A stretch of 64,000 bases of DNA from assembly GCF_032062105.1 (NCBI RefSeq), contig NW_026934771.1:310001-374000 (forward strand), in the 5' to 3' direction. Source of the stretch: Saccostrea cucullata (lineage: Eukaryota). Shown here piece by piece: positions 7,651 to 22,973 of the stretch (position 1 is its first letter; every line of letters starts with the position of its first letter). A model generated the notes under the pieces. That model was not told the origin of the DNA, ran no database searches, and saw only the letters and a program-made list of their open reading frames with translations. A program made the translations under genes and the position numbers.

Positions 7651-8111
7651 GGTGATGGTGCTCCTTGTTATCAGCCGTTCTCAGTGGGGATCAGGCAATC
7701 GGCCTATACCATTTAAACGCTTGTGTGACCTGGAATAATGGAACAGTCCAGGAGCCTTTTCACCCCTGTTTGAATGGTATAGCCCTTTGCTATATAAATG
7801 ACTGCAGAGGCAGTCTCGACCTCTCTCTCTCTCTCTCTCGGAAACCCACAGAAGAAGCAAGAATCTGAAAAGAAGATTAAAGGTAGTGTAGTGTGATGTG
7901 AATGTGTAAGGGAACGAATGTATATGGAACCGCTTGTAAGTGCGCATGTGTGACAGAGTTGTCGTCTGTTCGTCGGAGAGAAAACACATGGTTGACTGAT
8001 TGAGAATATTCTTTGGTATATTTGTGTTATATGTGCTCCAGATTAAACATATATGAAAATTACCTCGGTCGTCAGTTAGTTTAATCTTGCATAGGTTATA
8101 TAACACTTCAC

Positions 8112-8125
8112 TGGCGCTGCGAGCA
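8112..8125 (+). promoter_or_regulatory. Primer-binding site of Gypsy B (tRNA-Ser-like)
   Basis: TGGCGCTGCGAGCA lies 1 nt after the 5' LTR and resembles the complement of metazoan tRNA-Ser(CGA/TGA) 3' ends. Confidence 0.7.
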
Positions 8126-8636
8126 ATCGATTCTGCACGAAAATTACTGTGTATTGAATTTCGTTGATATTTTTCTCGTGGCGGGAATCTGTCAAAGTCC
8201 CACACGTGTATATATATAGTAATTCTTGAAAATTTACTGACAATTTGAATTAAGTTATGTGAAATTCTATTTATTCATTAAGTTATAATCATTACGATTA
8301 CAAAGTCTGGCAGTATTATATTTTTGTGCATTTTGTTGAAACAAAAGTTAAACACGTGGCGAGGCTAATCACCGGAAGATCAAGATGCACATGGTCGACC
8401 ACATGCAGGGCCTGGGAAGGGGCCGCGCCACGCGCCATATGCGCATTCTGCCGAAAAATGGCGCACTGTAATGATGGTGCGCTGCGCCATGCGGCGCATC
8501 CCCAAAAATAATGTAAAATGCGCACACGCATTATTTCTACCATGTGATTTTATCGAGATCGACGTTATCGGTAATCTTCATCAAAGTTAGATGGAATTGT
8601 CCGATGAGTACGGAATGATAGAATCGGAACGCCATT

Positions 8637-10761
8637 TTTAGGTCACCTGAGTTACTCAGGTGACCTATTGCTATCCGTTTTCGTCCGTCGTCGTGTGTCG
8701 TGTGTCGTGCGTCGTGCGTCGTGTGTTAACATTTGAACATTTTCAGCTTCTTCTCTGAAACCACTGAACCAATTTCAACCAAATTTGGTATACAGCATCT
8801 ATGGGTGAAGGGGAACAAAAATTGTGAATTTTATGGTCCCCGCCCCCCTGGGGCCTGAGGGGTGGGGCCAAAACCACTAAAATTAGTGCATTCTTTGAAA
8901 ATCTTCTTCTTTATTCCTGGACATCAAGCAGGCAAACTGTTGGCATGAATGTAATGAGCATTGAGTCCTCTACCAAAATTGTGAAATTCATGGCCCCAGG
9001 GTCAGGGGTTCTAATAGTGCTAGGGCGGGGCTATATAGATTATATAGTGAAAATGCATGATTTCTTTGAAAATCTTCTTCTCTGCTCCTGGGTATTAAAT
9101 AAACTAACCAAGCACATAGTTATGATGAGCAAGAGTGCCTCTACCAAAATTGTGAATTTTATGACCCCAGGGTCAGGGGTTCTGGTGTTAGGGCGGGGCT
9201 CTATTGGTTATATAGTGAAAATGCATTTATTCTTTGAAAATCTTCTTCTCTACTTCTGGGTATCTAATACACTAACTAAGTATATAGTTATAATGAGCAA
9301 GAGTGCATCTACCAAAATTGTGAATTTTATGACCCCAGGGTCAGGGGTTCAGGTGTTAGGGCGGGGCTCTATTGGTTATATAGTGAAAATGCATTTATTC
9401 TTTGAAAATCTTCTTCTCTACTTCTGGGTATTAAATGAACTTACCAAGCACAAAGTTATGATGAGCAAGAGTGCCTCTACCAAAATTGTGAATTTTATGA
9501 CCCCAGGGTCAGGGGTTCAGGTGTTAGGGCGGGGCTCTATGGGTTATATAGTGAAAATGCATTTATTCTTTGAAAATCTTCTTCTCTACTTCTGGGTTTT
9601 AAATGAACTTACCAAGCACATAGTTATGAGGAGCAAGAGTGCCTCTACCAAAATTGTGAATTTTATGACCCTAGGGTCAGGGGTTCTGGTGTTAGGGCGG
9701 GGCTCTATTGGTTATATAGTGAAAATACATGAATTCTTTGAAAATCTTCTTCTCTACTTCTGGGTATCAAATAAACTAACTAAGTATATAGTTATGATGA
9801 GCAAGAGTGCCTCTACCAAAATTGTGAATTTTATGACCCCAGGGTCAGGGGTTCTGGTGTTAGGGCGGGGCTCTATTGGTTATATAGTGAAAATGCATTT
9901 ATTCTTTGAAAATCTTCTTCTCTACTTCTGGGTATTAAATGAACTTACCAAGCACATAGTTATGATGAGCAAGAGTGCCTCTACCAAAATTGTGAATTTT
10001 ATGACCCCAGGGTCAGGGGTTCTGGTGTTAGGGCGGGGCTCTATGGGTTATATAGTGAAAATGCATTAATTCTTTGAAAATCTTCTTCTCTACTTCTGGG
10101 TATTAAATGAACTTACCAAGCACAAAGTTATGATGAGCAAGAGTGCCTCTACCAAAATTGTGAATTTTATGACCCCAGGGTCAGGGGTTCTGGTGTTAGG
10201 GCGGGGCTCTTTTGATCATATAGTGAAAATGCATTAATTCTTTGAACATCTTTCTTTTGCTCCTGGGTTTTATGCCAAAGATCCAAGTATATATATTTAT
10301 GATGAAGAAAGGTGCATCTAGCAAAATGGTTATTTTTTATGCCCCCCCCCCCGCTGGGTGGGGGGGGGGGGGGGGGGGGTACAAAGTCTGAAAATAAATT
10401 AATGCTTTGAAATCTGCTCTTTGGTATTAATCAACCATTTTATGATAAAATTTGCAAAATTTTGAAATATGTGGCCCCAGGATCAGTGGTTCCTTTGGGA
10501 TGAGGTGCACAACTGGTTATAAAGTGGAAGTGCATTTTCTCTTAATGTTACTCTCAGTCTGATCTTCCTCTGGGTATTAAGTAAATAGAGTAAACATGCC
10601 AAGTCTTTAACACTGTTTAATTATGATCAGTAATGGTGCCTCTTTCAAAATTGTGAATTGCGAATGTCATGGCCTCTGGTTTAAAACACGAACCAAATTT
10701 AATTGTTTGAAAGTTGTTGCACAATACTCAGGTGACCTATAAGGCCCGTGGGCCTCTTGTT
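8637..10761 (+). mobile_element. HINE (non-autonomous Helentron) carrying a 168-bp tandem satellite
   Basis: Left end ttttaggtcacctgagttactcaggtgaccta hairpin plus (cgt/cgtgt)n microsatellite, then ~8-9 tandem 168-bp units. Right end ctcaggtgaccta..aggcccgtgggcctcttgtt. Inserted in a T-run. Confidence 0.85.
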
Positions 10762-11118
10762 AAATACTGACATGCCGCCGGCAAAGAAAATGAAGATTTC
10801 ACTTCCACGTGGCCAAAAGACACTAACCTCCATGCAGTTTCCAACCGGCTTAAGTTCAGAAATAGAATCGAGTCCCGAGGAAGGAGATACAGCAAATGTA
10901 AGAGGTGAGAATGCTGATGCAGAAGTGAACAATGACGAGACCGTCGGAGACCAGTAAAAGTGCTGATAAACAAAAAAGAAAATTTCACTCATCGTGGCTG
11001 AAATTGTGGCCCTGGATGATTTACGAATCGGAAAAAATGTTTTGCACTATATGTAAAGAAAGGGGTAAAGACAATATATTTACGCAGGGTTGTGGCACAT
11101 TTAAAACTTCGTCATTAA

Positions 11119-11275
11119 ATCGCGTGCAATTAAAATTACGCAGACAAAAAACATATGGCTGAACATATGGCAGAAAGCAGGTCATGTAATTAGGTCGGTT
11201 TTCACCGAAGTCCTAGGTAATACTACAGCTAGGACTTCGGTTAAATCAATAATCGCACAACAAAAGTTACGCGGT
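11119..11275. mobile_element. 157-bp MITE in the hAT transposase
   Basis: Short TIRs atcgcgt/acgcggt, TAA (or TTAA) duplication, and internal hairpin ccgaagtcctag...ctaggacttcgg. Removal restores ...TSSLRHENSQDH. Confidence 0.75.
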
Positions 11276-13316
11276 TAAGACATGAAAATTCTCAAGATCA
11301 CAGGGATAGTATACAAGCACAGTCACTTAGTAAAGAGATGAACGTAGCTGTAGCTAAAATGATGACAGACCACGATGCAGCTTTAATAAAGGCTATAAAG
11401 ACTGTACATTGGCTTGCCATTGAGAATTTACCACTGTCAAAATTTGAAAGTATGATGGATTTTCTTAAAGATGTAGGCACACCAAATCTCCATTTTTTAC
11501 AAGTTGGAAATCGAATTGATTATCAGTCGTACTATTCAGCTAATGAATTTCTACATGCAATTAGTGATGTGATAGAAGAGAAAACAACTGAAAACCTACA
11601 GAAGTCACCATTTGTAACAATATATGCAGATGAAAGTACAGACATTTGTAACAAGAAAAGAATGACAATGACAGCTAGGATAATTAACCCAGAAAATTCT
11701 AGAGCACAAACTGTATATTTGAGAGACATTGAGTATGAGAGTGGGACAGGGGAGGGATTGACTTCAGAGATAATTAAGGAGTTGAATTTACGACACATAT
11801 CGATATCAAAGGTCCTTGGTTTCGGATCAGATGGTGCATCAGTCATGACGGGGTTAGATAAAGGTGTAAGTGGAAGACTGAAAGAATTGAATCCTCACAT
11901 TTTAAACATTCATTGCATGGCACATAGATTAGCACTTTGCACTGCACAAGCAGCAGAAGGAATTCCTGCTCTGAAAAGATACCAAGAGTTTATGACAAAA
12001 TTATTCTATTATTTTAAAGTCTCAGCAGATAGGGAGAAGGAAGTTCACAAAGTTCAAGCTCTTTTGGATCATCCCATGCTGAAGTATAAAGAAATTCATG
12101 CTGTGCGCTGGCTCTCATTCTACGATGGATTGGAAACCATTTACAAAACTCTTGATCCTCTTTTAACTTACTAGTGCACAACCGAGAAGCCAAAAAAGAC
12201 CCTAAAGCCAAAGGACTCCTAAAGCAAATGGCCACAATGCAATTCATCTATATCACCTATCTAATGATGGATGTTCTTCCATGAGATTGTGTCTAACCTT
12301 TCAAAAGGATGACTTAGATGTTGCTCGTGCTAAGGTACATAATAAAATATTGTGCATTTTAATTTACAATATATACATGTATTACAAAAAAGCACAAATT
12401 GTAATTCTGTAAAATTTTATTTATAAATCCAACTTTTTACAAGACGTTTTAAAATTAGATTTCAGTTGACTCCTGTCTGAGTGAGCTGGAGGCTTTCAAA
12501 GAAGGAAAAACTTTCCACACTACATTTGTTGAGCAGTTTGCTTCAGATATTACAGAAGTTGATGACCATCCTGAATTCAAAGGACACAGAATTCAAAAAG
12601 TTCCTGGTGCAAATTTCCAGTCACTTAAGAGCCAATTTATAAATAGTTTGGTCTCAAATATTAGGAAAAGGTAATTTATTTGGTTATTCCACTCGAGTCA
12701 TAGACAATTACATACTGGTACACACTACTGTAATAGAAATAATTTTTTCTTCATTCTGTACATCAACAATAGACTAGACAGATAAGTTAGTCTTAAGAAA
12801 ACTTTCATTAATTGATTAATGTTATTGTTATTAAACAATACAAATTATTTGAAAAAAAATATCTTTGACTTCAGATTTCCACAGAAGTCCCTGATGGATG
12901 CCTTCTATGTTCTGTCCATGCGAGCCATTAATTTCAGTGATGTGGAGACATATGGTATTGAAGAAATAAATGAACTTCTTGACTACTACGGAACTTCAAA
13001 AGTAACTATTTCATTCTTCAAAATAATTTTATTTGTCAATAAAAAGATAATTTCAAATCAGTGGAAAAAAAATATGTTCATATAAATATACTTACTTCTA
13101 TTTAAATTGCAGTGTCACAAATCTGCCATCTCACAGCCGGTATTATGTGCAGAGAAAGTTAGAAATCAGTGGATGTTGGCCAAGCAGATTGTCAAGTCTG
13201 CAAGATACCCAACTGACCAGATGCAAGAATTATGGGAACTACTCACAAAACACCATAAAGAAGAATTGAATGAACTGATCAAGCTAGCACAGATTGCACT
13301 CACTTTGCCCCTGCAC

Positions 13317-14875
13317 ACTGCAAGTGAAGATCTGAGAGTCCTACCAGGTGTGGGTCAGGTCATAGCTGACCGTATATGGGAACTAAGAAAGCAAGGCCCC
13401 ATTGACTTGGAAACATTTGTGGGTATACCTAAACTAAGGGTCACACCAGAACTAGTTGAATGTGTAGATTTTCTACCACCATTGTGTATAGATCATAGCT
13501 ACGCCAAGCCCACAAGTGATGGTATGGAGGATTACTTCACAAAGTTCCAGGATTACGAGGATCATGGTGAAGTAAATACAGAGTATAAGACGAGTGACTG
13601 CACAGCAAAGCTGTCTACTCACCCTCAACACACAGCAACCCCTTTGTCGGAACCTAGGAGAACGCCATCATCAGGTGAAAGTAGCTGTGCATCGCACGCA
13701 TACAAGAGTGAATCGACACCGACGGGTACTCAGAAGCATTCTATACCTAACAATATGCGACCACATGGCAGTCACACTAATTACAGATCAGAAGAACAGG
13801 AAAATTCTTTGCATGACAATGAAGTGCAACGTCCAATTCCAGACCATATCAGGTTCCAGACACCTATGGTACAATGACACACATTGCCTTCACCTCAGTT
13901 GTCGCCAACTTTCGTACGACGTCGACCAACAGTCTCTGAGAGCCAGGGGCAACATGAATCAAAACCTGTGTATCTGCCCAAAGCCTTGCGGTATGATGGG
14001 ACCTCTAACTGGGAAGCCTTCTTTGTGAAATTCAGCAGATATGCAGATGTATCTCACTGGACAGCTACAGAGCGCAAAGATCAGTTATGTTGGTGTCTCG
14101 ATGGAAAAGCCAGCGAGTTTTACACCAGTATTGTGAACAGAGACTATGGCATAGACTATTTTGAGTTAGTTCGAAAACTAGAAAAGTGTTTTAACTTTGT
14201 GGATTTACCAGAAACTCTTCAAGTCCAGTTTATGGGAGCCCATCAGAACACAGGAGAAAAACTTGAAGATTGGGCTGACAGATTACTTTCCCTAGCAATG
14301 AAAGCTTTTCGTGACCTGCCAGAAGAACACGTATACTCGCAAGCTGTATGGAGATTCTGTCAGGGATGTTGTGATAAAGAGGCTGGTCAAAATGCTGCAA
14401 TGTCAAAACCAAAATCTATTGAGGACGCCATAGACAAGATCAAGTGGTACCAGCATACTACCAAAGCCATTTATGGTAAACCCATCAGATGCCGAGAATT
14501 TTCTGAAGATTCCGAGCACGAGATTGATTCTGTGAGAACAATTAACGCAGCAGTGAAAAGCGACAAGAATTTTTCTTCATCAGCACATCAATCAGATCAG
14601 CTAAAGTCTATGGAGGAACAAATCAAGATTCTTGTGGACAACATGCAAATGCTTCAAACTAAATTAAGCAGCATGGAGAATAAACAGAAAAGAAAACCAC
14701 AAAATACGGAGACCCGTACATGCTACAATTGTGACAAACCAGGGCACCTAGCAAGAGATTGCAGAAGCCTAAGAAGTTGAGGGCCCAGAATCAAAGCAGA
14801 AGTCAGAATACAAACGGGAGTTCACAGTCTGAGACGAGACCTTTAAACGAGGGTGGGCCGGGTCAACAGGCGTAA
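13317..14875 (+). pseudogene. Gypsy gag (N-terminal HhH motif, capsid-like region, CCHC knuckle), 5' truncated
   Basis: EDLRVLPGVGQVIADRI, YDGTSNWEAF and CYNCDKPGHLARDC. In-frame TGA at 13875 and an inferred 1-bp loss near 14765. Confidence 0.85.
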
Positions 14876-17800
14876 ATCCGACCCGAAATACTACAGAGCG
14901 CCTCAAGAAAAATTGTGCTTCAGAAGAAACGAGCCCTAAATCAATAAGACATACATCAAGGAAACGCAAGAAGCAAAGAAGACATAGAAGGAAAACATCA
15001 AATAGAAATCGTACTTCCTATTCTGAAGATAAAAGCGCAGATGTAGATAAAACAATGACCATCCTACAGTTGGGATCAGCTTCTATGTTGAGATTAAATG
15101 TAAAAGTGAACTCTACAGACATTACTGCAGTAATAGATACAGGAGCAGAAGTCACTATCATCTCAGATCGGGTGTATGAAAAGATGCAGATTAAACCACC
15201 TATTAAGAAACGCACTGTCATGCATGGTGCAGGGCGTGATATGAAAATGGATACATTCATCATTGGTCCAGTTGACATCAAGATAGGATCCAAAACATAC
15301 CCATCTGAAATATACGTAGCACCTATGGATGATGACATGCTCCTAGGCTTAGACTTCATGCAGGAAAACAATGTTATACTCGATTGCAGTAAGAACCAGT
15401 TCTCCATTAACTCTGAAGTTTTGCAGATGTCATATGGAAAGAGTCGGGAAGCTCCAACAGTTGCCAAAGTAACAGTGCCTGGTAAAACTGTAATTCCACC
15501 TAATTCAGCCATACATGTAAATGGTAAACTATCTCGACACATTGAGGGAAGCTACATTATAGAGCCTGAGGAAGATATTCCAGTTATGATGCCACGATGT
15601 GTATACTCTAAACAAAACTCACCTAGGCTATGTTTAGTAAATGCCAGTGACCGATACTTTACCATTCGAAAAGGCACGATAGTAGGAGAAGCGTTGTCAG
15701 CCGACCCAATGACTGTTGTTTCAGCATCGAAACCCCAAAGTGAACAACCATTACCGGAAATTCCAGAGCATTTGAGTTCCCTTTTCCAGAAATCTGCAAA
15801 CCTAGACCAAAGTCAGAGCAAATTATTGATGAATCCACTCAAGGAATATAAAGATATTTTTGCTGAGAATGATTTTGATCTTGGCACCTTTACAGAGATA
15901 GAACATTCGATAAACACTGGCTCTGCATCACCGATTAAGCAGAGGATGAAAATCATTTACGCACAATGCTGGACGCAGGTATAATTGAACCGTCAACCTC
16001 AGAGTGGGCGTCGCCGCCCGTACATGTGCGGAAAAGAGACGGCAAAGTTAGATGGTGTATAGATTACAGGAAACTTAACTCTGTAACAAAGAAAGATGTT
16101 TACCCTTTACCTCTAATTGAAGAGTGTATTGACACATTGTCTGGAAATGAGTGGTTTTCCAAACTTGATGCCAACTCAGCGTACTATCAGATAAAAGTCA
16201 AAGATTCGGACAAGGACAAAACAGCCTTCATAACAAAGTATGGGTTATTCCAGTTTACCCGGATGAGTTTTGGTCTTTGCAACGCTCCATCGACTTATGA
16301 TAGAGTCATGAACTTAGTCTTGCGCGGACTGACATGGAACATTGTGTTAGCCTTTCTGGATGACATCCTTGTGATGGGAAAATCATTTGAGGATCATCTG
16401 CGCAACCTGAAAATAGTCTTTGATAGATTTCGTCATTACGGTCTAAAGCTAAAAGCCAGGAAATGCCTTCTATTCCAGAAAGAAGTAGAATTCCTAGGCC
16501 AGAAAGTAAACAAAACAGGATTAGCTATAGGGGACGAGCACGTCGAAGCTGTGAAAGATTGGAAAACCCCAGCAACAACAAAAGAAATTGAGAAATTTCT
16601 GGGTTTTGCAAATTACCACAGAACATTCATCAAGGACTATGCCAAGATGGCAGCACCTCTTAATCGGCTTACAGGCAAGAAGCCGTATGTGTGGGGACCA
16701 GAGCAGCAAGACGCCTTTGACAGTTTGAAGTTGTCACTTATAACTACTCCAGTTCTAGCATTACCAAACTCTAAGGATTTATTCATCCTAGACACAGACG
16801 CGTCAGACTTTGCAATAGGTGCAGAACTCGTGCAGGTGCTGGAGGGTAAAGAGCGTGTTATTGCGTATGGCAGTTTTAGTCTCACCCCAGAGCAACAGCG
16901 CTATTGTACAACAAGAAAGGAGTTACTAGCAATTGTCCGTTTCACCAAACAATTCAATCATTATCTGTTGGGCAGAGAATTTGTGGTTAGGACTGACCAT
17001 AGCAGCCTTACCTGGCTCCTTAATTTTAAAAACCCACAAGGTCAGTTAGCCAGATGGCTGGGGTAAATTCACTGAAGATGTGGATGATGTCGTTCCCCTG
17101 GGTAGGACAGTAGAAACAACAGAATTACATGCTGCTTTATCCTGGTTATTTAACGAGAAGGGATACGATGACATGGAACTCGTTTGTCAAGAGTCAAGCT
17201 CAGACTTGCATCATACATCGTTGGAAATTTCCTTTACAGACCCAGATAAACCTACTCTCATTAGTATGGAGGAACAACAGTGTAATCAAGTCCGCACTGC
17301 TTCCCGTACTAGTGGGTTTGCAGGCATTGAATATTCACCCGAAGTCCTGAAAGAATTCCAGGAAAAAGATTCTGATCTTAGATTGATACTGCCTTATCTG
17401 GTGTCAAATGAAACCCCATCTGAAGATGAAATCTTTATAAGCAGCAAGGCAGCAAAGAAATACTGGGTTAATAAAGAGACGTTTTTCATTGATGGTGAGG
17501 GAATACTACGCAACAACCCAAAGAATGGTGGAGAACCAAGACTTGTGGTGCCAAAAACCTTGGTAGATGAAGTACTAGGACTATGTCATGACTTACCAGT
17601 TATGGGACATCAAGGTGTGTCAAGAACATATTTACGAGTGAAAGGGAAGTTCTATTGGTATAACATGAATCAGTCAACCAGAGATTTTGTAAGGACATGT
17701 GACATTTGCAGTAAACACAAAAAGGCCAACAGAAAAGCAAAGTGTCCCATGACAAAATACCAAGCTGGAGTACCAATGGAGAGAGTTCACCTTGATTTCT

Positions 17801-18640
17801 TGGGTCCTTTACCCGAATCTACCTCAGGCAACTCAAACATTTTAGTCATGGTGGACCAATTTACCAAATGGGTGGAATGTGTCCCATTACCATCACAAAC
17901 AGCTGAAGTCACAGCTAGAGCTGCTGTAAATGAATTTTTTGCTTGATTTGGTTTTCCCTTCAACATATTCACTGACCAGGGGAGAAACTTTGAGAGCAGG
18001 CTCTTCAAGACTATTTGTGATATACTTCAGATTCATAAGAGTAAGCATACCTGCTGACCTAGTTTTTCGACCACCTGAAACCATTGAATCCAGTGACCAT
18101 GAGGATTATGTGTCAAGATTACAAGAGTCTATAAGAACAGCTCATGAAGTGGCCAGAGATGCACTGAAAGCACATCAAGTCCATATGAAGAGAGATTATG
18201 ATGTTAAGATTCAAACCAGAGAATATGCTGTTGGTGATCTCATCTATGTGTTGGATAGCGCCAAAACTAAAGGTCGTTCTAAGAAACTAGATCCACCTTG
18301 GAAGGGACCTGGCATTGTTATTCAGAAAGTATCATCATATATCTACAAGGTCAAACTTCGAAATTCCGTGTTTATTACTAACCACGACAGATTGAAAAAG
18401 TGTTGTGACAGGAAAATACCTGACTGGCTACGCCAATGCCAGCATCGTCTGCGAAATGGAGAAAATATTCTCCAGTTGCAATCAATTGACACTTTTTGTA
18501 TATGTGACAAACCTGACGACGGACGTCTTATGATTCAGTGCGACTCCTGTGATACTTGGTATCACGGAGCATGTGTCGCAGTCACTGAAGAGTTAGCAGA
18601 TACCTTGAAGACGTATATATGTCCAAGGTGTCAAGTATAA
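14842..18640 (+). pseudogene. Gypsy pol: protease, RT, RNase H, integrase, C-terminal PHD finger
   Basis: IDTGA, WCIDYRKLN, FLDD, DTDASD, TDH, HHCC zinc motif, HLDFLGP and TDQGRNFE, ending in a Cys4-His-Cys3 PHD. Deletions at ~15950, ~17065 and ~18040, and a stop at 17944. Confidence 0.93.
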
Positions 18641-18696
18641 TATGTCTTGTACCTTTTACTAATGTTATGTTTGTGTTCAATTTTATTTTAGGTACA

Positions 18697-20184
18697 ATGG
18701 AAGAATCTGACAGAGAGTACATCACGGCAGATGAAGCCGACATCTCTGATTCTGATGAGTACCTCACAGATAATCACTGCCATCAAGAAACAGACGAAGA
18801 GTCGTCTGATGTTGAAGAGGGCCTACTACCCTTTAAGCGGTGACGGACATGTGATGTGCCGACACAGGAACTTTCACCAGATTCGAAACCTGCCAAGGAA
18901 CCGACCCAGGAGCTGGGACTGTCCACACAAAGACAGATACCTACTGAACGGGATAAACGATCAGCATGCCCTGTTCCTGGATGTCATTACCGCTCTAAGC
19001 ACCTCAAGCATCATGCTTGGGAGTATCATCTCCCTAGGTTGTTCTGGGATCGCCCCTGGAATTCTTTGGCAGCGCTGCCGGAATATCACACTTTGAGAGC
19101 ATCGTGTTTAAATGTGTTAGGTCAGTACGTCTTGGGACCAACTGCGACAATCGACGAGTTAGTGGTGCACGTCAATGAAGAAATCCCACTGCCCCGAGAA
19201 TACCCAATTATGGGTAGGACCTTTGTCCAGATGGGTCAGCTGACCCGTACGATGCGGTGGCCCTTCGTGAACCGCTTCACCATGAGTCCAGTAAACAGCC
19301 CAGTGGTATTACTTCACTGGAGAATCCTTCTGTCCCTAGTTTGTAACTTATTGGAGGAAAAGAGACGTGCGTTCAAGAGTTGGGGCAGAAAGGAGCTCGC
19401 TGAGCTCGAAGAAAGGGTCAGAACCAGAAGGTCACATGGAGTCGGAGCACCACAGGAGACCCACAGACGTGTTGAAGAACATGATGAGATCGAGTGGGAA
19501 GTTCTGGATGAATGCGGTAGTGAAGAAGATGTAGCAGATAAAGACAGCGATGGAGATAGCAGTAGTGAGAAAGAGGACACCCCTTATGAAGTTATTGTCC
19601 TCCAAGCAGGTTACGAGGAAGACTTCCCAAGCCTAGGAAAACGGAAAATGGGAAGTAGTATTACTCTATTAAAAGGATCGATGAACATCATAGTTGACAC
19701 GGGAAATCCTTCAGATAGACAATACTTACTGTCCCGCCTCAGTGAACAGGGTTTGGCAGTTGAGGACATAGAATGCTGTGTGACGACTCATGGTCACTTG
19801 GACCACATGGGAAACTTGAATGTTTTCCCTAATGCCTACCATGTTGCAGCTTCTCAGATGTGTGTTGGTGATCTACACCACTCCCATGACTTCAAGTTGT
19901 CATTCTGGATCAATGATCAAATAGAAGTCGTACACACACCAGGACATACCTCAGAAGACATCTCCATACTAGTCCATGCATCCCAGATGGGAACAGTAGC
20001 TGTCGTTGGTGATCTTTTCCACAGCATGGAAGACTTGGAAGATGCATCAATTTGGAGGAGGTTCAGTAGGAATGTGAACGACCAGGACAAGAATAGGAGA
20101 AAGATCCTTGATGTAGCAGAATACATTGTCCCCGGCCATGGTCCGATGTTTCGAGTTCCGGGACGAGAGCGAAACATTATATAA
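18697..20184 (+). CDS. Gypsy accessory ORF3: acidic N-terminus, C2H2-like/unknown domain and MBLAC1-like metallo-beta-lactamase-fold hydrolase (one in-frame stop at 18841)
   Basis: ATG 18697 follows a polypyrimidine-AG and is in frame with ORF 18856-20184. Motifs VDTG, THGHLDHMGN, TPGHT, VVGDLF and IVPGHG. It lies between integrase and the PPT. Confidence 0.85.
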
Positions 20185-21420
20185 ACTGTGCTGTTCTATA
20201 TTGTAATAGATAATTGAATCCTGATATTGTTCATTTTAGTTATAGTTGTAAGTATATGCAAGAGATGCGGCAGAATTCATTATGTTTAATAAGTGTTAGA
20301 ATTTCTGATGATTCTTTTGTATCATTCGTCATTCCTAAATTGTCATATAATTGTGCTATATTGATTTCATGTCGAAATTTTTTTTAGCCTGTGTATGTGT
20401 TATTATTGCATGTAGTTTGAGTGATTGGATGGAAGTGTAAGTCTCATTATCAATCATTTTTTTATAGTTATATTCATATTGTTGATATAATGGTAATATT
20501 TATCATTGAGATCTCATAGTGAATTTAGAAATAATTTGTATCTGGATTCAGCATGGTTTATTGTATGTGAACTCAGGTAAAATGATTTAGAGACTGTATG
20601 TTGTGAACATTATCTGAATTGTATGTAATACCACTGCTGATATTCAGTTTATCTGCTTCACTTTATCATAGAATCTTTAAGGATCACTGTTTATTTTCAC
20701 AATCATATAAGTGTTTGGTTGATATTTACATAAGGTACAGGAGTACCTTCTTTTTTCAAAAGGGAGGGGAGTGTAGTGTGATGTGAATGTGTAAGGGAAC
20801 GAATGTATATGGAACCGCTTGTAAGTGCGCATGTGTGACAGAGTTGTCGTCTGTTCGTCGGAGAGAAAACACATGGTTGACTGATTGAGAATATTCTTTG
20901 GTATATTTGTAAGTGTTATATGTGCTCCAGATTAAACATATATGAAAATTACCTCGGTCGTCAGTTAGTTTAATCTTGCATAGGTTATATAACACTTCAG
21001 TAGTAATACAAATTAGAAGTATTTAAAGGGAAAAGGAAAGATAAGGCTAGGGTACAGAGCACCGGTCTGTATTTAGCCAAGGAATTGAATTGAAGCACAA
21101 GGTGTAGTAATCCTGAGTAAGGGTGAGGCACCGAGTGCTCAGTTCAATAGAAACTTGGTTACGGAACCAGGTGCAAGGAACCCAGTCACAGTACCCAGTT
21201 ACAAAGAACTAACCTCGGCTTGTAGATCCCGGTGTTTAAATAAAAAAAAAATAATAAACAAGGACAAGTATCCCATGAAAATAATAAATAATCATACTTG
21301 TACATAATTTTAATTCCCAGTATTAATTATAGGCTCAGATAGAGCCAGAGGAAAAGTTTATATATATTGGACCCTGTATCTCCTGAAAACGGACCCTAAA
21401 TTTGGTTACACGTTACATTT

Positions 21421-21438
21421 TGGTGGCAGCGGTGGGAT
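21421..21438 (+). promoter_or_regulatory. Primer-binding site of element A (tRNA-Leu)
   Basis: TGGTGGCAGCGGTGGGAT, complement of the tRNA-Leu(AAG/TAG) 3' end, 3 nt after the LTR end at 21417. Confidence 0.85.
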
Positions 21439-21528
21439 GCCTAAATGGCACTCTGATTATCAGTTTGATTATACTGTATAGTAAATGTTCTTTGCTAAGT
21501 AAGCAATGTTTTTTTTAAATTTCAGATC

Positions 21529-22167
21529 ATGTCATTGACGAAAGTTACCCCCCGGAAACCCGGCGTTCTATGTCCCATTTGCCTTTCCCGACTCTCTTCA
21601 CAAGAGGAATGGAAAGAGCATCTTCTAGCATGTGCTACTGATGACATAAATAAACGAAAATTTGAGTGTAACCAGTGTGACAAAGCATTTGCTAAACATT
21701 TCCTTCTAAGGAGACACCAGAAGAGGTTACATTCAACTACTGGTTTGCAAGGTGGAGAAAAAAATGAACCATCGAACTCCAAATCCGTTGATAACCATGA
21801 TGATGATTCTGACTGGCAAGAAGACCCAGGAGATCTTATTTATGAGACAGGCCTTGAAGTTGGTAGAACCATCAGGAAGAAAACATCGCCCAGTCTCCCT
21901 GGAGTCAAGCGCAAAGCAGACGAACTTGTAGAAAAGATGCCTGACCAATCTGCAGACAAAGATTCAAGCATGGTGGATGATGGTAAGGATCATGAGGCGC
22001 CCATGGTTTTACATCACTGCCCCTGCTGTAGGGAACATGTTACTAGGTTGAATGCCAGCACTCAGACGGATACCAGTCGTCACCAGAAGACCGTCAGAGT
22101 TGTAAGAAAGTACCAAAAGGATGGTGAATGTGTGGAGAGCGTTGAGGAAGACATTTGGAATGACTAA
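21529..22167 (+). CDS. 212-aa zinc-finger protein, the only substantial sense ORF of LTR element A
   Basis: CPIC-x12-H-x3-C and CNQC-x12-H-x4-H fingers, followed by acidic/basic segments and a CPCC motif. Uninterrupted, and preceded by a tttcag acceptor-like site. Confidence 0.75.
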   Translation: MSLTKVTPRKPGVLCPICLSRLSSQEEWKEHLLACATDDINKRKFECNQCDKAFAKHFLLRRHQKRLHSTTGLQGGEKNEPSNSKSVDNHDDDSDWQEDPGDLIYETGLEVGRTIRKKTSPSLPGVKRKADELVEKMPDQSADKDSSMVDDGKDHEAPMVLHHCPCCREHVTRLNASTQTDTSRHQKTVRVVRKYQKDGECVESVEEDIWND

Positions 22168-22356
22168 TTATAGGGATGTACTTTGAAAAAGAAACAATGT
22201 ACATAAGTCTATTGTTGTAAATACTTGAATAATTGTGTAACTGGGTATAAGAAAGGAATTCTTAACCTCGTTTTGTCGATCTTTTCATTGTCTAAAAAAA
22301 AAAAAAAAACATAACTAATAAACATGTGGGACGCAAGTGTACAGAGGCATGGGTAG

Positions 22357-22973
22357 TGTAACGAGTAATGAATAAGGCAGTCGGCCTATACCATTCAAAC
22401 GCTTGTGTGACGTGGAATAATGGAACAGTCCAGGAGCCTGTTCACCCCTGTTTGAATGGTATAGCCCTTTGCTATATAAACGACTGCAGAGGCAGTCTCG
22501 ACCTCTCTCTCTCTCGGAAACCCACAGAAGAAGCAAGAATCTGAATAGAAGATTAAGGGTAGTAATACAAATTAGAAGTATTTAAAGGGAAAAGGAAAGA
22601 TAAGGCTAGGGTACAGATCACCGGTCTGTATTTAGCCAAGGAATTGAATTGAAGCACAAGGTGTAGTAATCCTGAGTAAGGGTGAGGCACCGAGTGCTCA
22701 ATTCAATAGAAACTTGGTTACGGAACCAGGTGCAAGGAACCCAGTCACAGTACCCGGTTACAAAGAACTAACCTCAGCTTGTAGATCCCAGTGTTAAAAT
22801 AAAAAAATAATAAACAAGGACAAGTATCCCACGAAAATAATAAATAATCATACTTGTACATAATTTTAATTCCCAGTATTAATTATAGGCTCAGATAGAG
22901 CCAGAGGAAAAGTTTATATATATTGGACCCTGTATCTCCTGAAAACGGACCCTAAATTTGGTTACACGTTACA
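22357..22973 (+). repeat. Intact 3' LTR of element A with TATA box and (CT)n
   Basis: TGTAAC...GTTACA termini, gctatataaa at ~22471, and AATAAA motifs at ~22800-22845. Confidence 0.9.

What the first reader, a model, noticed from the sequence alone, without database searches (positions are those of the whole stretch)
18491..18640. Integrase ends in an H3K4me3-reader-type PHD finger rather than a chromodomain
Seen: pol terminates with TFCICDKPDDGRLMIQCDSCDTWYHGACV...YICPRC. Known: the aromatic residue before the first Cys, the M of MIQCD and the W of WYH are cage residues in H3K4me3-binding PHDs (TAF3/DIDO/BPTF/PHF2 class). Chromoviruses use an integrase chromodomain in this position to guide integration. 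Inference: this lineage may target active promoters through its own histone reader.
Basis: partly seen in the sequence, partly recalled or inferred. Interest (0 to 1): 0.8.

Follow-up and report, generated by a model that had tools for sequence, protein, structure and literature searches.

The report
Gypsy integrase carrying a PHD finger
A dead copy of a jumping gene (a Ty3/Gypsy retrotransposon) belongs to an old, abundant family of marine invertebrates whose integrase ends in a conserved histone-reading PHD finger of the type that binds the active-promoter mark H3K4me3; whether this steers where the element lands is still untested.

Summary
Window 18497-18631 encodes a canonical PHD finger (Pfam E 1.5e-11), followed two codons later by the stop that ends the pol frame.

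The window copy (7887-20999, 4-bp duplication GTAG) is degraded. A premature stop and a ~200-bp deletion separate the PHD from the integrase core.

In other copies the PHD lies in one unbroken frame with PR-RT-RNaseH-IN:
- at least 6 diverged families in this genome
- at least 126 PHD matches genome-wide
- more than 100 public protein clusters from molluscs and echinoderms
- several elements with identical LTRs

The cage residues are nearly invariant (aromatic 103/106, Met 106/106, Trp 106/106). dN/dS is 0.12.

The nearest solved structures are all H3K4me3 readers: CFP1, Spp1, PHF2/8, BPTF, DIDO, TAF3. The predicted fold fits them at about 1 Å.

So [quoted passage not shown] is supported. Promoter targeting is still only inferred. 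A CpG proxy on 14 insertions was inconclusive (p = 0.39). Two of 15 insertions sit at the 5' LTR of other elements.

PHD-transposon fusions are already published as a general phenomenon. I found no description of this lineage. Its elements also carry a third ORF with a TatD domain, replaced in the window's family by a metallo-beta-lactamase-fold domain.

First readers of this scan flagged the same thing on five other pieces of this genome.

The parts
7883..7886 (+). Target-site duplication, left copy (GTAG)
   Evidence: Same 4 bases at 21000-21003. The uninterrupted paralogue of the target at 22559-22563 has them once.
7887..8110 (+). 5' LTR (224 bp, TG...CA)
   Evidence: Self-BLAST pair with 20772-20999, about 98% alike; ends read.
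8112..8129 (+). Primer-binding-site-like TGGCGCTGCGAGCAATCG, one base after the LTR
   Evidence: Read. The same motif follows the 5' LTR in the C7697 copy.
8406..13324 (.). About 4.9 kb absent from the related C7697 copy, including a 168-bp satellite (8887-10346): a secondary insertion in the leader/gag start
   Evidence: BLAST of the window against C7697; repeat family D1.
13107..14780 (+). gag (PNMA-like capsid, CCHC knuckle), split by an in-frame stop at 13875-13877
   Evidence: ORF pieces; Pfam zf-CCHC and PNMA. The C7697 copy has one 520-aa frame.
15055..17066 (+). pol: protease (15055-15984), then RT and RNase H (15966-17066), in two different frames
   Evidence: Pfam gag-asp_proteas, RVT_1, RT_RNaseH; frame change near 15945.
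17080..17946 (+). Integrase N-terminal part (H2C2 zinc domain and first half of the rve core), ended by a premature stop at 17944-17946
   Evidence: Pfam Integrase_H2C2 E 7e-18; rve matches only profile positions 4-59 of 102; stop shown.
18043..18496 (+). Integrase C-terminal SH3-like (GPY/F-like) module and two-helix linker, read in the frame of the PHD. It begins just after the ~200-bp deletion.
   Evidence: weak Pfam SH3_Tf2-1 and MLVIN_C; AlphaFold model with beta-barrel 9-62 and helices 70-89.
18497..18631 (+). PHD finger (Cys4-His-Cys3). Cage candidates: F (18494-18496), M of MIQCD, W of WYH. Stop codon at 18638-18640.
   Evidence: Pfam PF00628 E 1.5e-11; PDB hits; Foldseek; conservation.
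18697..20184 (+). ORF3: a conserved N-terminal module (CxxxC...HxxxH, LLHWR) plus a metallo-beta-lactamase-fold domain. Interrupted near its start in this copy.
   Evidence: Pfam Lactamase_B E 5e-15; N-module homologous to the ORF3 of TatD-bearing families.
20758..20771 (+). Polypurine tract AAAAGGGAGGGGAG
   Evidence: Read, directly before the 3' LTR. Similar tracts occur in the other families.
20772..20999 (+). 3' LTR (228 bp)
21000..21003 (+). Target-site duplication, right copy (GTAG)
22372..22973 (+). Uninterrupted paralogue of the target: the 3' LTR of a small LTR element whose 5' LTR (7690-7886 plus 21000-21417) was split by this insertion
   Evidence: Self-BLAST; PBS-like TGGTGGCAGCGG after 21417.

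Best explanation
The PHD finger is a real, selected, C-terminal module of the integrase of an old Ty3/Gypsy lineage. Its elements run LTR, gag, PR-RT-RNaseH-IN-PHD, ORF3, LTR, and they make 4-bp target duplications. The lineage lives in molluscs and echinoderms.

Shown:
- The finger is in frame with pol in many diverged copies with long open frames.
- Its zinc ligands and the K4me3-cage positions are kept under purifying selection. These are an aromatic cap, Met and Trp, plus the acidic residue after the third Cys that holds H3R2 in BPTF.
- It is most like the CFP1/Spp1/PHF2 class in sequence and predicted fold.

Inferred:
- The finger binds the H3 tail trimethylated at K4 (my estimate about 0.7).
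- By doing so it tethers the intasome to H3K4me3 nucleosomes, biasing integration toward 5' ends of active transcription units, including promoters of other elements (about 0.45).

This would be the euchromatic counterpart of the chromodomain-H3K9me tether of chromoviruses. The window copy itself is a decayed insertion and makes no integrase.
For: Domain and frame:
- Pfam PHD hits in the window and in five long pol frames.
- The motif is conserved in 16 own-genome copies from at least 6 families.
- At least 126 PHD matches genome-wide, many in open frames of 1300-2700 aa.

Selection:
- dN/dS is 0.046/0.377 = 0.12 between two subfamilies.
- In 106 public clusters the cap is aromatic in 103, Met is present in 106, Trp in 106 and the Asp after Cys3 in 93. 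The positions between them vary.

Class:
- phmmer against the PDB gives CFP1 6e-14, Spp1, PHF2, BPTF, DIDO and PHF8 at the top.
- The AlphaFold model has pLDDT 91.7.
- Foldseek fits K4me3-bound BPTF, DIDO, PHF8, PHF2 and Spp1 at 0.9-1.1 Å with 43-46% identity.
- The PHF2 cage is defined in PMC8166343.
- The window type (aromatic, Asp, Met, Trp) equals the CFP1/Spp1 pattern in the alignments.

The lineage is alive elsewhere:
- 7 of 11 external elements have 100% identical LTRs.
- All 13 external loci share the gag, pol-PHD, ORF3 architecture.

Precedent for the mechanism:
- A PHD fused to the LEDGF integrase-binding part moved HIV-1 integration to TSSs: 50.3% against 3.8% within 2.5 kb (PMC4176367).
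- Chromodomains direct chromovirus integration (cited in PMC6673714).

Anecdote: 2 of 15 delimited insertions lie in or within 175 bp of the 5' LTR of another LTR element.
Against: - No binding data exist.
- The window family has Asp where BPTF and PHF2 have a second cage tyrosine. CFP1 and Spp1 share that Asp, and both were crystallised with H3K4me3.
- The CpG o/e proxy for unmethylated, promoter-like DNA was not significantly higher within 500 bp of 14 insertions than at 1.5-4.5 kb (9/14 higher, Wilcoxon p = 0.39).
- One young insertion sits in a satellite (L055), and several lie among other transposons.
- Surviving insertions are filtered by selection, so they are a poor record of target choice either way.
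- Grau-Bové et al. note that aiming insertions at active chromatin should be costly.
- Poly-A RNA reads of the window family were almost absent: 8 and 3 reads.
Confidence: 0.6

Rival explanations
1. The finger binds the H3 tail or H3K4me3, but its role is not target choice. It could give general chromatin or mitotic tethering, or nuclear retention of the pre-integration complex. It could also bias the element toward chromatin where a new copy stays expressed, without promoter-level precision.
For: The insertion contexts seen are heterogeneous, including a satellite and other TEs, with no significant CpG signal.
Against: Every well-studied integrase-linked chromatin tether, natural or engineered, changes site distribution: the chromodomain, and the LEDGF-PHD fusion. 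A K4me3-specific cage is more than a general tether needs.
Confidence: 0.2
2. The finger recognises something other than H3K4me3. Candidates are unmodified H3, another methyl-lysine, or a non-histone protein with an H3-like N-terminus. It might also act in integrase multimerisation or nucleic-acid binding.
For: PHF2's PHD also binds the H3-mimic N-terminus of VRK1 (PMC8166343). The window family lacks one of the four cage walls of BPTF/PHF2 (alignment).
Against: All of the best PDB neighbours by sequence and by fold are K4me3/2 readers. Met and Trp of the cage are invariant in 106 clusters, and the R2-anchoring Asp is kept in 93. CFP1 and Spp1 have the same three-wall pattern and were solved bound to H3K4me3 (titles).
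Confidence: 0.12
3. The finger is not part of the element. It would be a chance zinc-motif match, a host exon next to this copy, or an assembly chimera.
For: In this copy the finger is out of frame with the integrase core, and the copy is broken in several places.
Against: The finger lies inside the LTR pair and upstream of ORF3, PPT and the 3' LTR. It is present in frame in many long pol frames here, and in 13 loci from other assemblies including an annotated Pinctada genome. Pfam E is 1e-9 to 1e-11 each time.
Confidence: 0.01

Closest known systems
Chromoviruses (Ty3/Gypsy elements with an integrase C-terminal chromodomain, e.g. MAGGY)
   Same: Same superfamily and pol order. A small histone-methyl-lysine reader is appended after the integrase SH3-like/GPY-F module. 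The presumed job is to tether the intasome to marked nucleosomes.
   Different: The predicted target is therefore active rather than silent chromatin. Whether the RT belongs to the chromovirus clade was not tested. This lineage has a TatD or MBL ORF3.
PHD-transposon fusions surveyed by Grau-Bové et al. 2022 (10.1101/2021.11.30.470311), including PYGO-like PHDs in cnidarian retrotransposons
   Same: PHD co-occurs with RT and integrase domains in predicted proteins, with an H3K4me-reading type of PHD. The general idea of reader capture by TEs is already published.
   Different: Here the finger is nearest CFP1/Spp1/PHF2. PYGO is not among the 60 best PDB hits. The hosts are molluscs and echinoderms. 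The lineage-wide conservation, fixed C-terminal position and element anatomy are not described in that text.
Chlamydomonas LTR elements with PHD (REM1; Gypsy-7a_cRei)
   Same: Ty3/Gypsy-type LTR retrotransposons with a PHD inside pol. Gypsy-7a_cRei is active in laboratory strains (PMC9940879).
   Different: In Gypsy-7a_cRei the legend lists PHD between RNase H and integrase, not at the integrase C-terminus. The host is a green alga. The REM1 paper could not be read.
CR1-like non-LTR retrotransposons and Rehavkus DNA transposons with PHD (Kapitonov and Jurka 2003; cited in PMC8557442)
   Same: A PHD finger is an accessory domain of a mobile element.
   Different: The transposition machinery is different (target-primed reverse transcription or a DNA transposase), with no retroviral-type integrase.
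Engineered PHD-LEDGF(IBD) tether for HIV-1 (reviewed in PMC4176367)
   Same: A PHD finger coupled to a retroviral-type integrase complex. It moved integration to TSSs (50.3% against 3.8% within 2.5 kb).
   Different: It is artificial and acts in trans through a host cofactor. Here the finger is part of the integrase polypeptide and evolved naturally.
CopiaMBD elements of arthropods (PMC6673714)
   Same: A retrotransposon captured a host chromatin or DNA-mark reader. Functional binding was shown, and integration guidance was proposed.

Membership tests
Ty3/Gypsy (Metaviridae) LTR retrotransposon | Paired LTRs with TG..CA-type ends, flanked by a short target-site duplication | tested here: met
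   Window LTRs 7887-8110 and 20772-20999 with TSD GTAG and an empty-site paralogue. 4-bp TSDs in 14 other delimited elements.
Ty3/Gypsy (Metaviridae) LTR retrotransposon | PBS after the 5' LTR and polypurine tract before the 3' LTR | tested here: met
   TGGCGCTGCGAG... at 8112 and AAAAGGGAGGGGAG at 20758-20771. The same layout is seen in relatives. The primer tRNA was not identified.
Ty3/Gypsy (Metaviridae) LTR retrotransposon | gag with CCHC knuckle; pol order PR-RT-RNaseH-IN | tested here: met
   Pfam on the window pieces and on five long frames.
Chromovirus | Chromodomain at the integrase C-terminus | tested here: not met
   Pfam finds PHD and no Chromo domain in the window or in five long pol frames. 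None of the listed public relatives carries a chromodomain family.
Chromovirus | RT/IN phylogenetic position inside the chromovirus clade | not tested
The integrase tree held only this lineage and its nearest PHD-less relatives.
H3K4me3-reading PHD fingers (CFP1/Spp1/PHF2/BPTF/DIDO/TAF3 class) | Cys4-His-Cys3 zinc ligands with PHD spacing | tested here: met
   Full-length Pfam PHD match. C95, C97, C109, C112, H117, C120, C136 and C139 are invariant in 82 aligned sequences. The public set was partly picked with a Cys/His pattern.
H3K4me3-reading PHD fingers (CFP1/Spp1/PHF2/BPTF/DIDO/TAF3 class) | Methyl-lysine cage: aromatic cap before Cys1, Met (or aromatic) two residues before Cys3, and Trp two residues before the His | tested here: met
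   The window has F, M and W at the positions aligned to PHF2 Tyr7, Met20 and Trp29 (PMC8166343). Lineage counts are 103/106, 106/106 and 106/106. The fourth wall (PHF2 Tyr14) is Asp here, as in CFP1 and Spp1. It is Trp or Tyr in 40 of 106 relatives.
H3K4me3-reading PHD fingers (CFP1/Spp1/PHF2/BPTF/DIDO/TAF3 class) | Acidic residue for H3R2 (BPTF Asp27, just after Cys3) | tested here: met
   QCD is present in the window. Asp occurs in 93 and Glu in 6 of 106 relatives. The role of BPTF D27 is as stated in PMC8166343.
H3K4me3-reading PHD fingers (CFP1/Spp1/PHF2/BPTF/DIDO/TAF3 class) | Fold superposable on K4me3-bound fingers | tested here: met
   The AlphaFold model (pLDDT 91.7) fits BPTF 2f6j, DIDO 4l7x, PHF8 3kv4 and Spp1 6j2p at 0.9-1.1 Å over about 50 residues. 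This is a prediction, not a solved structure.
H3K4me3-reading PHD fingers (CFP1/Spp1/PHF2/BPTF/DIDO/TAF3 class) | Measured, methylation-dependent binding to H3K4me3 | not testable with these tools
   Needs peptide binding assays.
PYGO-like PHD retrotransposon fusions (cnidarians) | PHD orthologous to PYGO1/2 | tested here: not met
   No Pygopus chain appears among the 60 best of 74 PDB sequence hits. The best are CFP1, Spp1 and PHF2.

The most novel reading that the evidence does not exclude
This is a widespread, still active 'PHD-virus' lineage of marine invertebrates and the mirror image of chromoviruses. Its integrase reads H3K4me3 by itself and aims insertions at the first nucleosomes of active transcription units, including the LTR promoters of other elements. 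A nuclease-type third ORF (TatD, or MBL in the window's family) is a second lineage-specific accessory. It would be the first natural retroelement known to target active-promoter chromatin through its own histone reader.
Probability: 0.35. Interest if true: 0.75.

Novelty: new variant of a known kind. Interest (0 to 1): 0.55.

Why it matters
How retroelements choose their landing sites is known in mechanistic detail for only a handful of systems: chromodomain-H3K9me, MLV IN-BET, HIV IN-LEDGF, and Ty1, Ty3 and Tf1. All known natural routes to promoters go through host adaptor proteins.

A natural integrase with its own H3K4me3 reader would be a direct, testable case of euchromatin targeting. 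It is conserved across two phyla and sits in elements with identical LTRs. It would also serve as a natural template for the PHD tethers engineered for gene-therapy vectors.

It matters for annotation too. Fragments of these elements are filed in public databases as 'COMPASS component SPP1' or 'NYNRIN-like', and as bacterial genes in symbiont MAGs.

If the finger turns out not to bias integration, the finding shrinks to one more accessory domain in a well-populated list.

Tried and rejected
1. A large insertion-site survey of the lineage in this genome. Only 15 delimited insertions could be studied: 4 here and 11 from other assemblies.

2. CpG o/e of flanks as a stand-in for unmethylated promoter DNA. 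No significant difference was found. The proxy is weak in mosaic-methylated invertebrate genomes.

3. A target sequence motif. The TSDs are 4 bp and mostly AT-rich, with no consensus.

4. Expression. Poly-A raw reads hardly touch the window family: 8 and 3 reads at 90% identity or more. The 'metatranscriptome' contigs cover it but may contain DNA, so this says nothing firm.

5. Single origin of the finger. The integrase tree needs at least 5 changes, 3 of them decayed copies. With no root, gain and loss cannot be told apart. The mixture-model run did not finish, so the tree is LG+G4 'quick'.

6. Literature. Nine full-text searches found no description of an integrase-terminal PHD in mollusc or echinoderm Gypsy elements, and none of TatD in LTR retrotransposons. 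Repbase could not be consulted, and the REM1 paper is not held.

Copies were only compared.

9. The large representative-protein search was not used, because the word search already gave over 100 relatives.

Full report
THE OBSERVATION

The ORF at window 17930-18640 (+) ends ...TFCICDKPDDGRLMIQCDSCDTWYHGACVAVTEELADTLKTYICPRCQV, followed by a stop. Pfam's PHD model (PF00628) matches residues 190-234, i.e. nt 18497-18631, end to end (profile 1-47/47). The E-value is 1.5e-11 and the score 44.6 bits against a cut-off of 24. The neighbouring ORF pieces carry gag (CCHC, PNMA-like), protease, RT, RNase H, the integrase H2C2 zinc domain and the first half of the rve core.

THE ELEMENT IN THE WINDOW

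Self-comparison shows LTRs at 7887-8110 and 20772-20999, about 98% alike. Other features:
- A TGG... primer-binding-like site starts one base after the 5' LTR.
- A polypurine tract (AAAAGGGAGGGGAG) lies directly before the 3' LTR.
- The 4-bp target duplication is GTAG.

The two outer flanks (7690-7886 and 21000-21417) are joined in an uninterrupted paralogue at 22372-22973, where GTAG occurs once. That paralogue is the other LTR of a small LTR element. The split copy is that element's 5' LTR, because a TGGTGGCAGCGG primer site follows 21417. The PHD-bearing element therefore inserted into the 5' LTR of another element.

THE COPY IS DEAD

Compared with a related copy on contig C7697, the window copy shows:
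- a 4.9-kb foreign segment with a 168-bp satellite at 8406-13324
- an in-frame stop in gag
- a frame change near 15945
- a 178-bp gap at 17058/59
- a premature stop in the pol frame at 17944-17946
- a ~200-bp deletion at about 18042 that removes the second half of the rve core and shifts the frame

As a result, the first ~37 residues of ORF 17930-18640 are out-of-frame junk. Real integrase C-terminal sequence starts at about 18043. RNA-library contigs from the same species carry the sequences missing at 17058/59 and 18040/41, which confirms that other copies are not deleted there (table 7).

IS THE FINGER PART OF POL IN BETTER COPIES?

Yes. A six-frame search of the whole 1.17-Gb genome with the integrase C-terminus found two groups:
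- about 11 copies of the window's family, 86-96% identical
- several families only 45-53% identical whose long open frames end in the same finger (1317, 1323, 1329 and 1449 aa, and one of 2706 aa)

Pfam on five such frames gives PR, RT, RNase H, Integrase_H2C2, rve and PHD in that order. A search with the finger alone gives at least 126 matches at E of 1e-6 or better. Many lie in open frames of 1300-2700 aa, including families I had first taken for PHD-less because their linkers differ.

First readers of this scan flagged the same kind of finger on five other pieces of this genome.

BEYOND THIS GENOME

The word-index protein search returned more than 100 clusters of pol proteins carrying PF00628. 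Named ones come from two phyla:
- Molluscs: Pinctada imbricata, Mytilus galloprovincialis, Pecten maximus, Haliotis rufescens, Nucella lapillus.
- Echinoderms: Lytechinus pictus, Diadema setosum, Diadema antillarum, Anneissia japonica, Acanthaster planci.

The ESM Atlas holds an 80-member 'Integrase zinc binding/PHD-finger/Integrase core' cluster, commonest in Mollusca.

The finger lies within 0-14 residues of the protein's end in nearly all of them.

Thirteen loci fetched from other assemblies all show gag (HHH_3, PNMA, CCHC), then pol ending in PHD, then ORF3. Eleven have LTR pairs, seven of them 100% identical, and all have 4-bp duplications. The lineage has therefore been active recently in those species.

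SELECTION ON THE FINGER

Between the window's subfamily and the C7697 subfamily, the 46 finger codons give dN 0.046 and dS 0.377, a ratio of 0.12. Between families dS is saturated.

In 106 public fingers with the canonical spacing:
- The residue before Cys1 is Tyr or Phe in 103.
- The Met two residues before Cys3 is present in 106.
- The Trp two residues before His is present in 106.
- The Asp after Cys3 is present in 93.
- Most other positions vary freely.

The Cys and His positions were part of the pattern used to pick the fingers. Met, Trp, the aromatic cap and Asp were not.

WHAT KIND OF PHD

phmmer against all PDB chains puts CFP1 first (6e-14). Then come Spp1, PHF2, BPTF, DIDO1, PHF8, PPS, TAF3, KDM7A, EBS, PHF20, Alfin-like, PHF13, PHF23, KDM5A/B, MLL5 and ING4/5. 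These are K4me3/2 readers.

An AlphaFold2 model of the last 141 residues, built from an 82-sequence alignment, has mean pLDDT 91.7. It shows an SH3-like barrel, two helices, then the finger.

Foldseek superposes the finger on K4me3-bound structures at 0.9-1.1 Å with 43-46% identity:
- BPTF (2f6j)
- DIDO (4l7x)
- PHF8 (3kv4)
- KDM7A (3kv5)
- Spp1 (6j2p)

PHF2 (3kqi, 7m10), TAF3 and Drosophila Cfp1 also appear among the hits.

In PHF2 the trimethyl-lysine sits in a three-sided cage of Tyr14, Met20 and Trp29, capped by Tyr7. R2 contacts Glu22. In BPTF R2 is held by Asp27 (PMC8166343).

The HMMER alignment maps the window's residues as follows:
- F matches Tyr7
- M matches Met20
- W matches Trp29
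- the Asp of KPDD matches Tyr14
- the Asp after Cys3 matches BPTF Asp27

CFP1 and Spp1 have the same Asp at the Tyr14 position, and both were crystallised with H3K4me3. In 40 of 106 relatives that position is Trp or Tyr, giving a full four-wall cage. One Mytilus fragment of such an element is even annotated 'COMPASS component SPP1'.

The class assignment is as well supported as sequence and predicted structure allow. Binding itself was not measured.

POSITION RELATIVE TO CHROMOVIRUSES

The finger follows the integrase C-terminal SH3-like module (WKGPG..., the GPY/F-like motif) by about 60 residues. That is where chromoviruses carry a chromodomain. No chromodomain is found. Whether the lineage branches inside the chromovirus clade was not tested.

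An integrase tree of 76 sequences (LG+G4, quick search) shows one strongly supported clade of 62 in which 58 carry the finger. The other four end in decayed or truncated tails. A second clade mixes a PHD-bearing subclade with PHD-less lineages. Without a root, one gain with losses cannot be told from two gains.

DOES IT STEER INTEGRATION?

This is inference. In favour:
- Chromodomains direct chromovirus integration (cited in PMC6673714).
- A PHD fused to the integrase-binding part of LEDGF moved HIV-1 integration to TSSs: 50.3% against 3.8% within 2.5 kb (PMC4176367).

For 14 delimited insertions I compared CpG o/e within 500 bp with that at 1.5-4.5 kb. Nine were higher. The medians were 0.67 and 0.60, with Wilcoxon p = 0.39. 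That is inconclusive, and the proxy is weak.

The individual cases are mixed:
- The youngest own-genome insertion (C12679, LTRs 99.5% alike) sits in a local CpG-rich patch, 1.0/0.8 against 0.3-0.4 further out. A CCAATCAG motif lies 13 bp from the 3' LTR.
- L055 sits in a satellite.
- Two of 15 insertions lie in or next to the 5' LTR of another LTR element. The window copy is one. L060 is the other, 175 bp inside the leader of a small BEL/Pao-like element.

That last pattern is what a promoter-mark tether might leave after selection has removed genic hits. It is post hoc, and the number is two.

The TSDs are 4 bp and mostly AT-rich, with no consensus.

PRIOR KNOWLEDGE

PHD fingers in mobile elements are not new:
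- CR1-like LINEs and Rehavkus transposons, and REM1 and other Chlamydomonas elements (PMC8557442 and PMC6673714).
- Gypsy-7a_cRei, with PHD listed between RNase H and integrase (PMC9940879).
- Grau-Bové et al. found Chromo and PHD to be the readers most often fused to RT and integrase domains across 172 genomes. They singled out PYGO-like, H3K4me-reading PHDs in cnidarian retrotransposons (10.1101/2021.11.30.470311).

The two main surveys of mollusc LTR elements do not mention a PHD. I found no text describing this integrase-terminal CFP1/PHF2-type finger, its conservation, or the TatD ORF3. I therefore rate it a new variant of a known kind. The idea is published and the lineage appears undescribed. 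Repbase and Dfam were not checked.

VERDICT

The domain assignment and the analogy of position are supported. Promoter targeting is plausible but untested. Interest is moderate: 0.55.

One experimental step is referred.

Noticed in passing
window 18697-20184; L035:1-2118, L036:7835-10000, L040:1286-2989, L041:1-2037; L050-L061: The lineage has a third ORF after the PHD. Its N-terminal module (CxxxC...HxxxH, LLHWR) is shared between families (E 9e-10 and 4e-8). The C-terminal domain is TatD DNase (PF01026) in 5 of the own-genome ORF3 pieces scanned and in 12 of the 13 external loci (the ORF3 of the thirteenth, L056, runs to the contig end and was not looked up). In the window's family it is metallo-beta-lactamase fold (PF00753). 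No paper with TatD in LTR retrotransposons was found.
   Followed up: partly
L037:3232-9999 plus L038:3-1349 (G000 C12715): In one family gag, pol, the PHD and the ORF3 N-module are read in a single open frame of about 2700 aa. Here the PHD is internal (residues 1849-1893) and no hydrolase domain follows before the LTR.
   Followed up: partly
proteins P0118, P0120, P0128-P0132, P0134 (public relatives): The PHD-less sister lineages end instead in an acidic tail followed by a conserved basic motif of the type T-R-[SA]-G-R...R-x-P-x-H-L-x-[DG]-[YF]. This might be a different kind of chromatin or nucleosome anchor. It was not examined further.
   Followed up: no
window 7690-7886 plus 21000-22973: A small LTR element has ~600-bp LTRs, a PBS-like site at 21421 and one 222-aa ORF at 21499-22164. 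Its 5' LTR is the target of the PHD-element insertion.
   Followed up: partly
window 8406-13324: A 4.9-kb segment is absent from the related C7697 copy. It holds seven-plus copies of a 168-bp satellite (8887-10346) and an unexplained 278-aa ORF (11338-12174).
   Followed up: no
G000 C7697:180926-190581 (L031/L032): A 4.83-kb tandem duplication (99.7% alike) of the 3' half of an element gives a series LTR, internal, LTR, partial internal, LTR, with two identical PHD-bearing frames 4827 bp apart.
   Followed up: no
proteins P0151, P0163, P0044, P0069, P0087 (public databases): Fragments of these elements are mis-annotated: 'COMPASS component SPP1' (Mytilus), 'NYNRIN-like' (Pecten), and bacterial 'DDE-type integrase' in Thiodiazotropha and Sedimenticola symbiont MAGs. 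The MAG cases are probably host DNA contamination.
   Followed up: no
protein P0083 (JGI metagenome): One PHD-bearing pol also carries a TPT1/KptA RNA 2'-phosphotransferase domain (PF01885), another accessory domain in this lineage.
   Followed up: no
window 13317-13480; L051, L052, L056, L060 gag genes: Gag of this lineage begins with a helix-hairpin-helix motif. Pfam HHH_3 or HHH hits occur in four external gag genes and in P0042.
   Followed up: partly
L055:5452-6102 and 19595-19848; L051:5479-6806 and 18152-19302: Two young external elements with identical LTRs are embedded in or flanked by tandem-repeat arrays.
   Followed up: no
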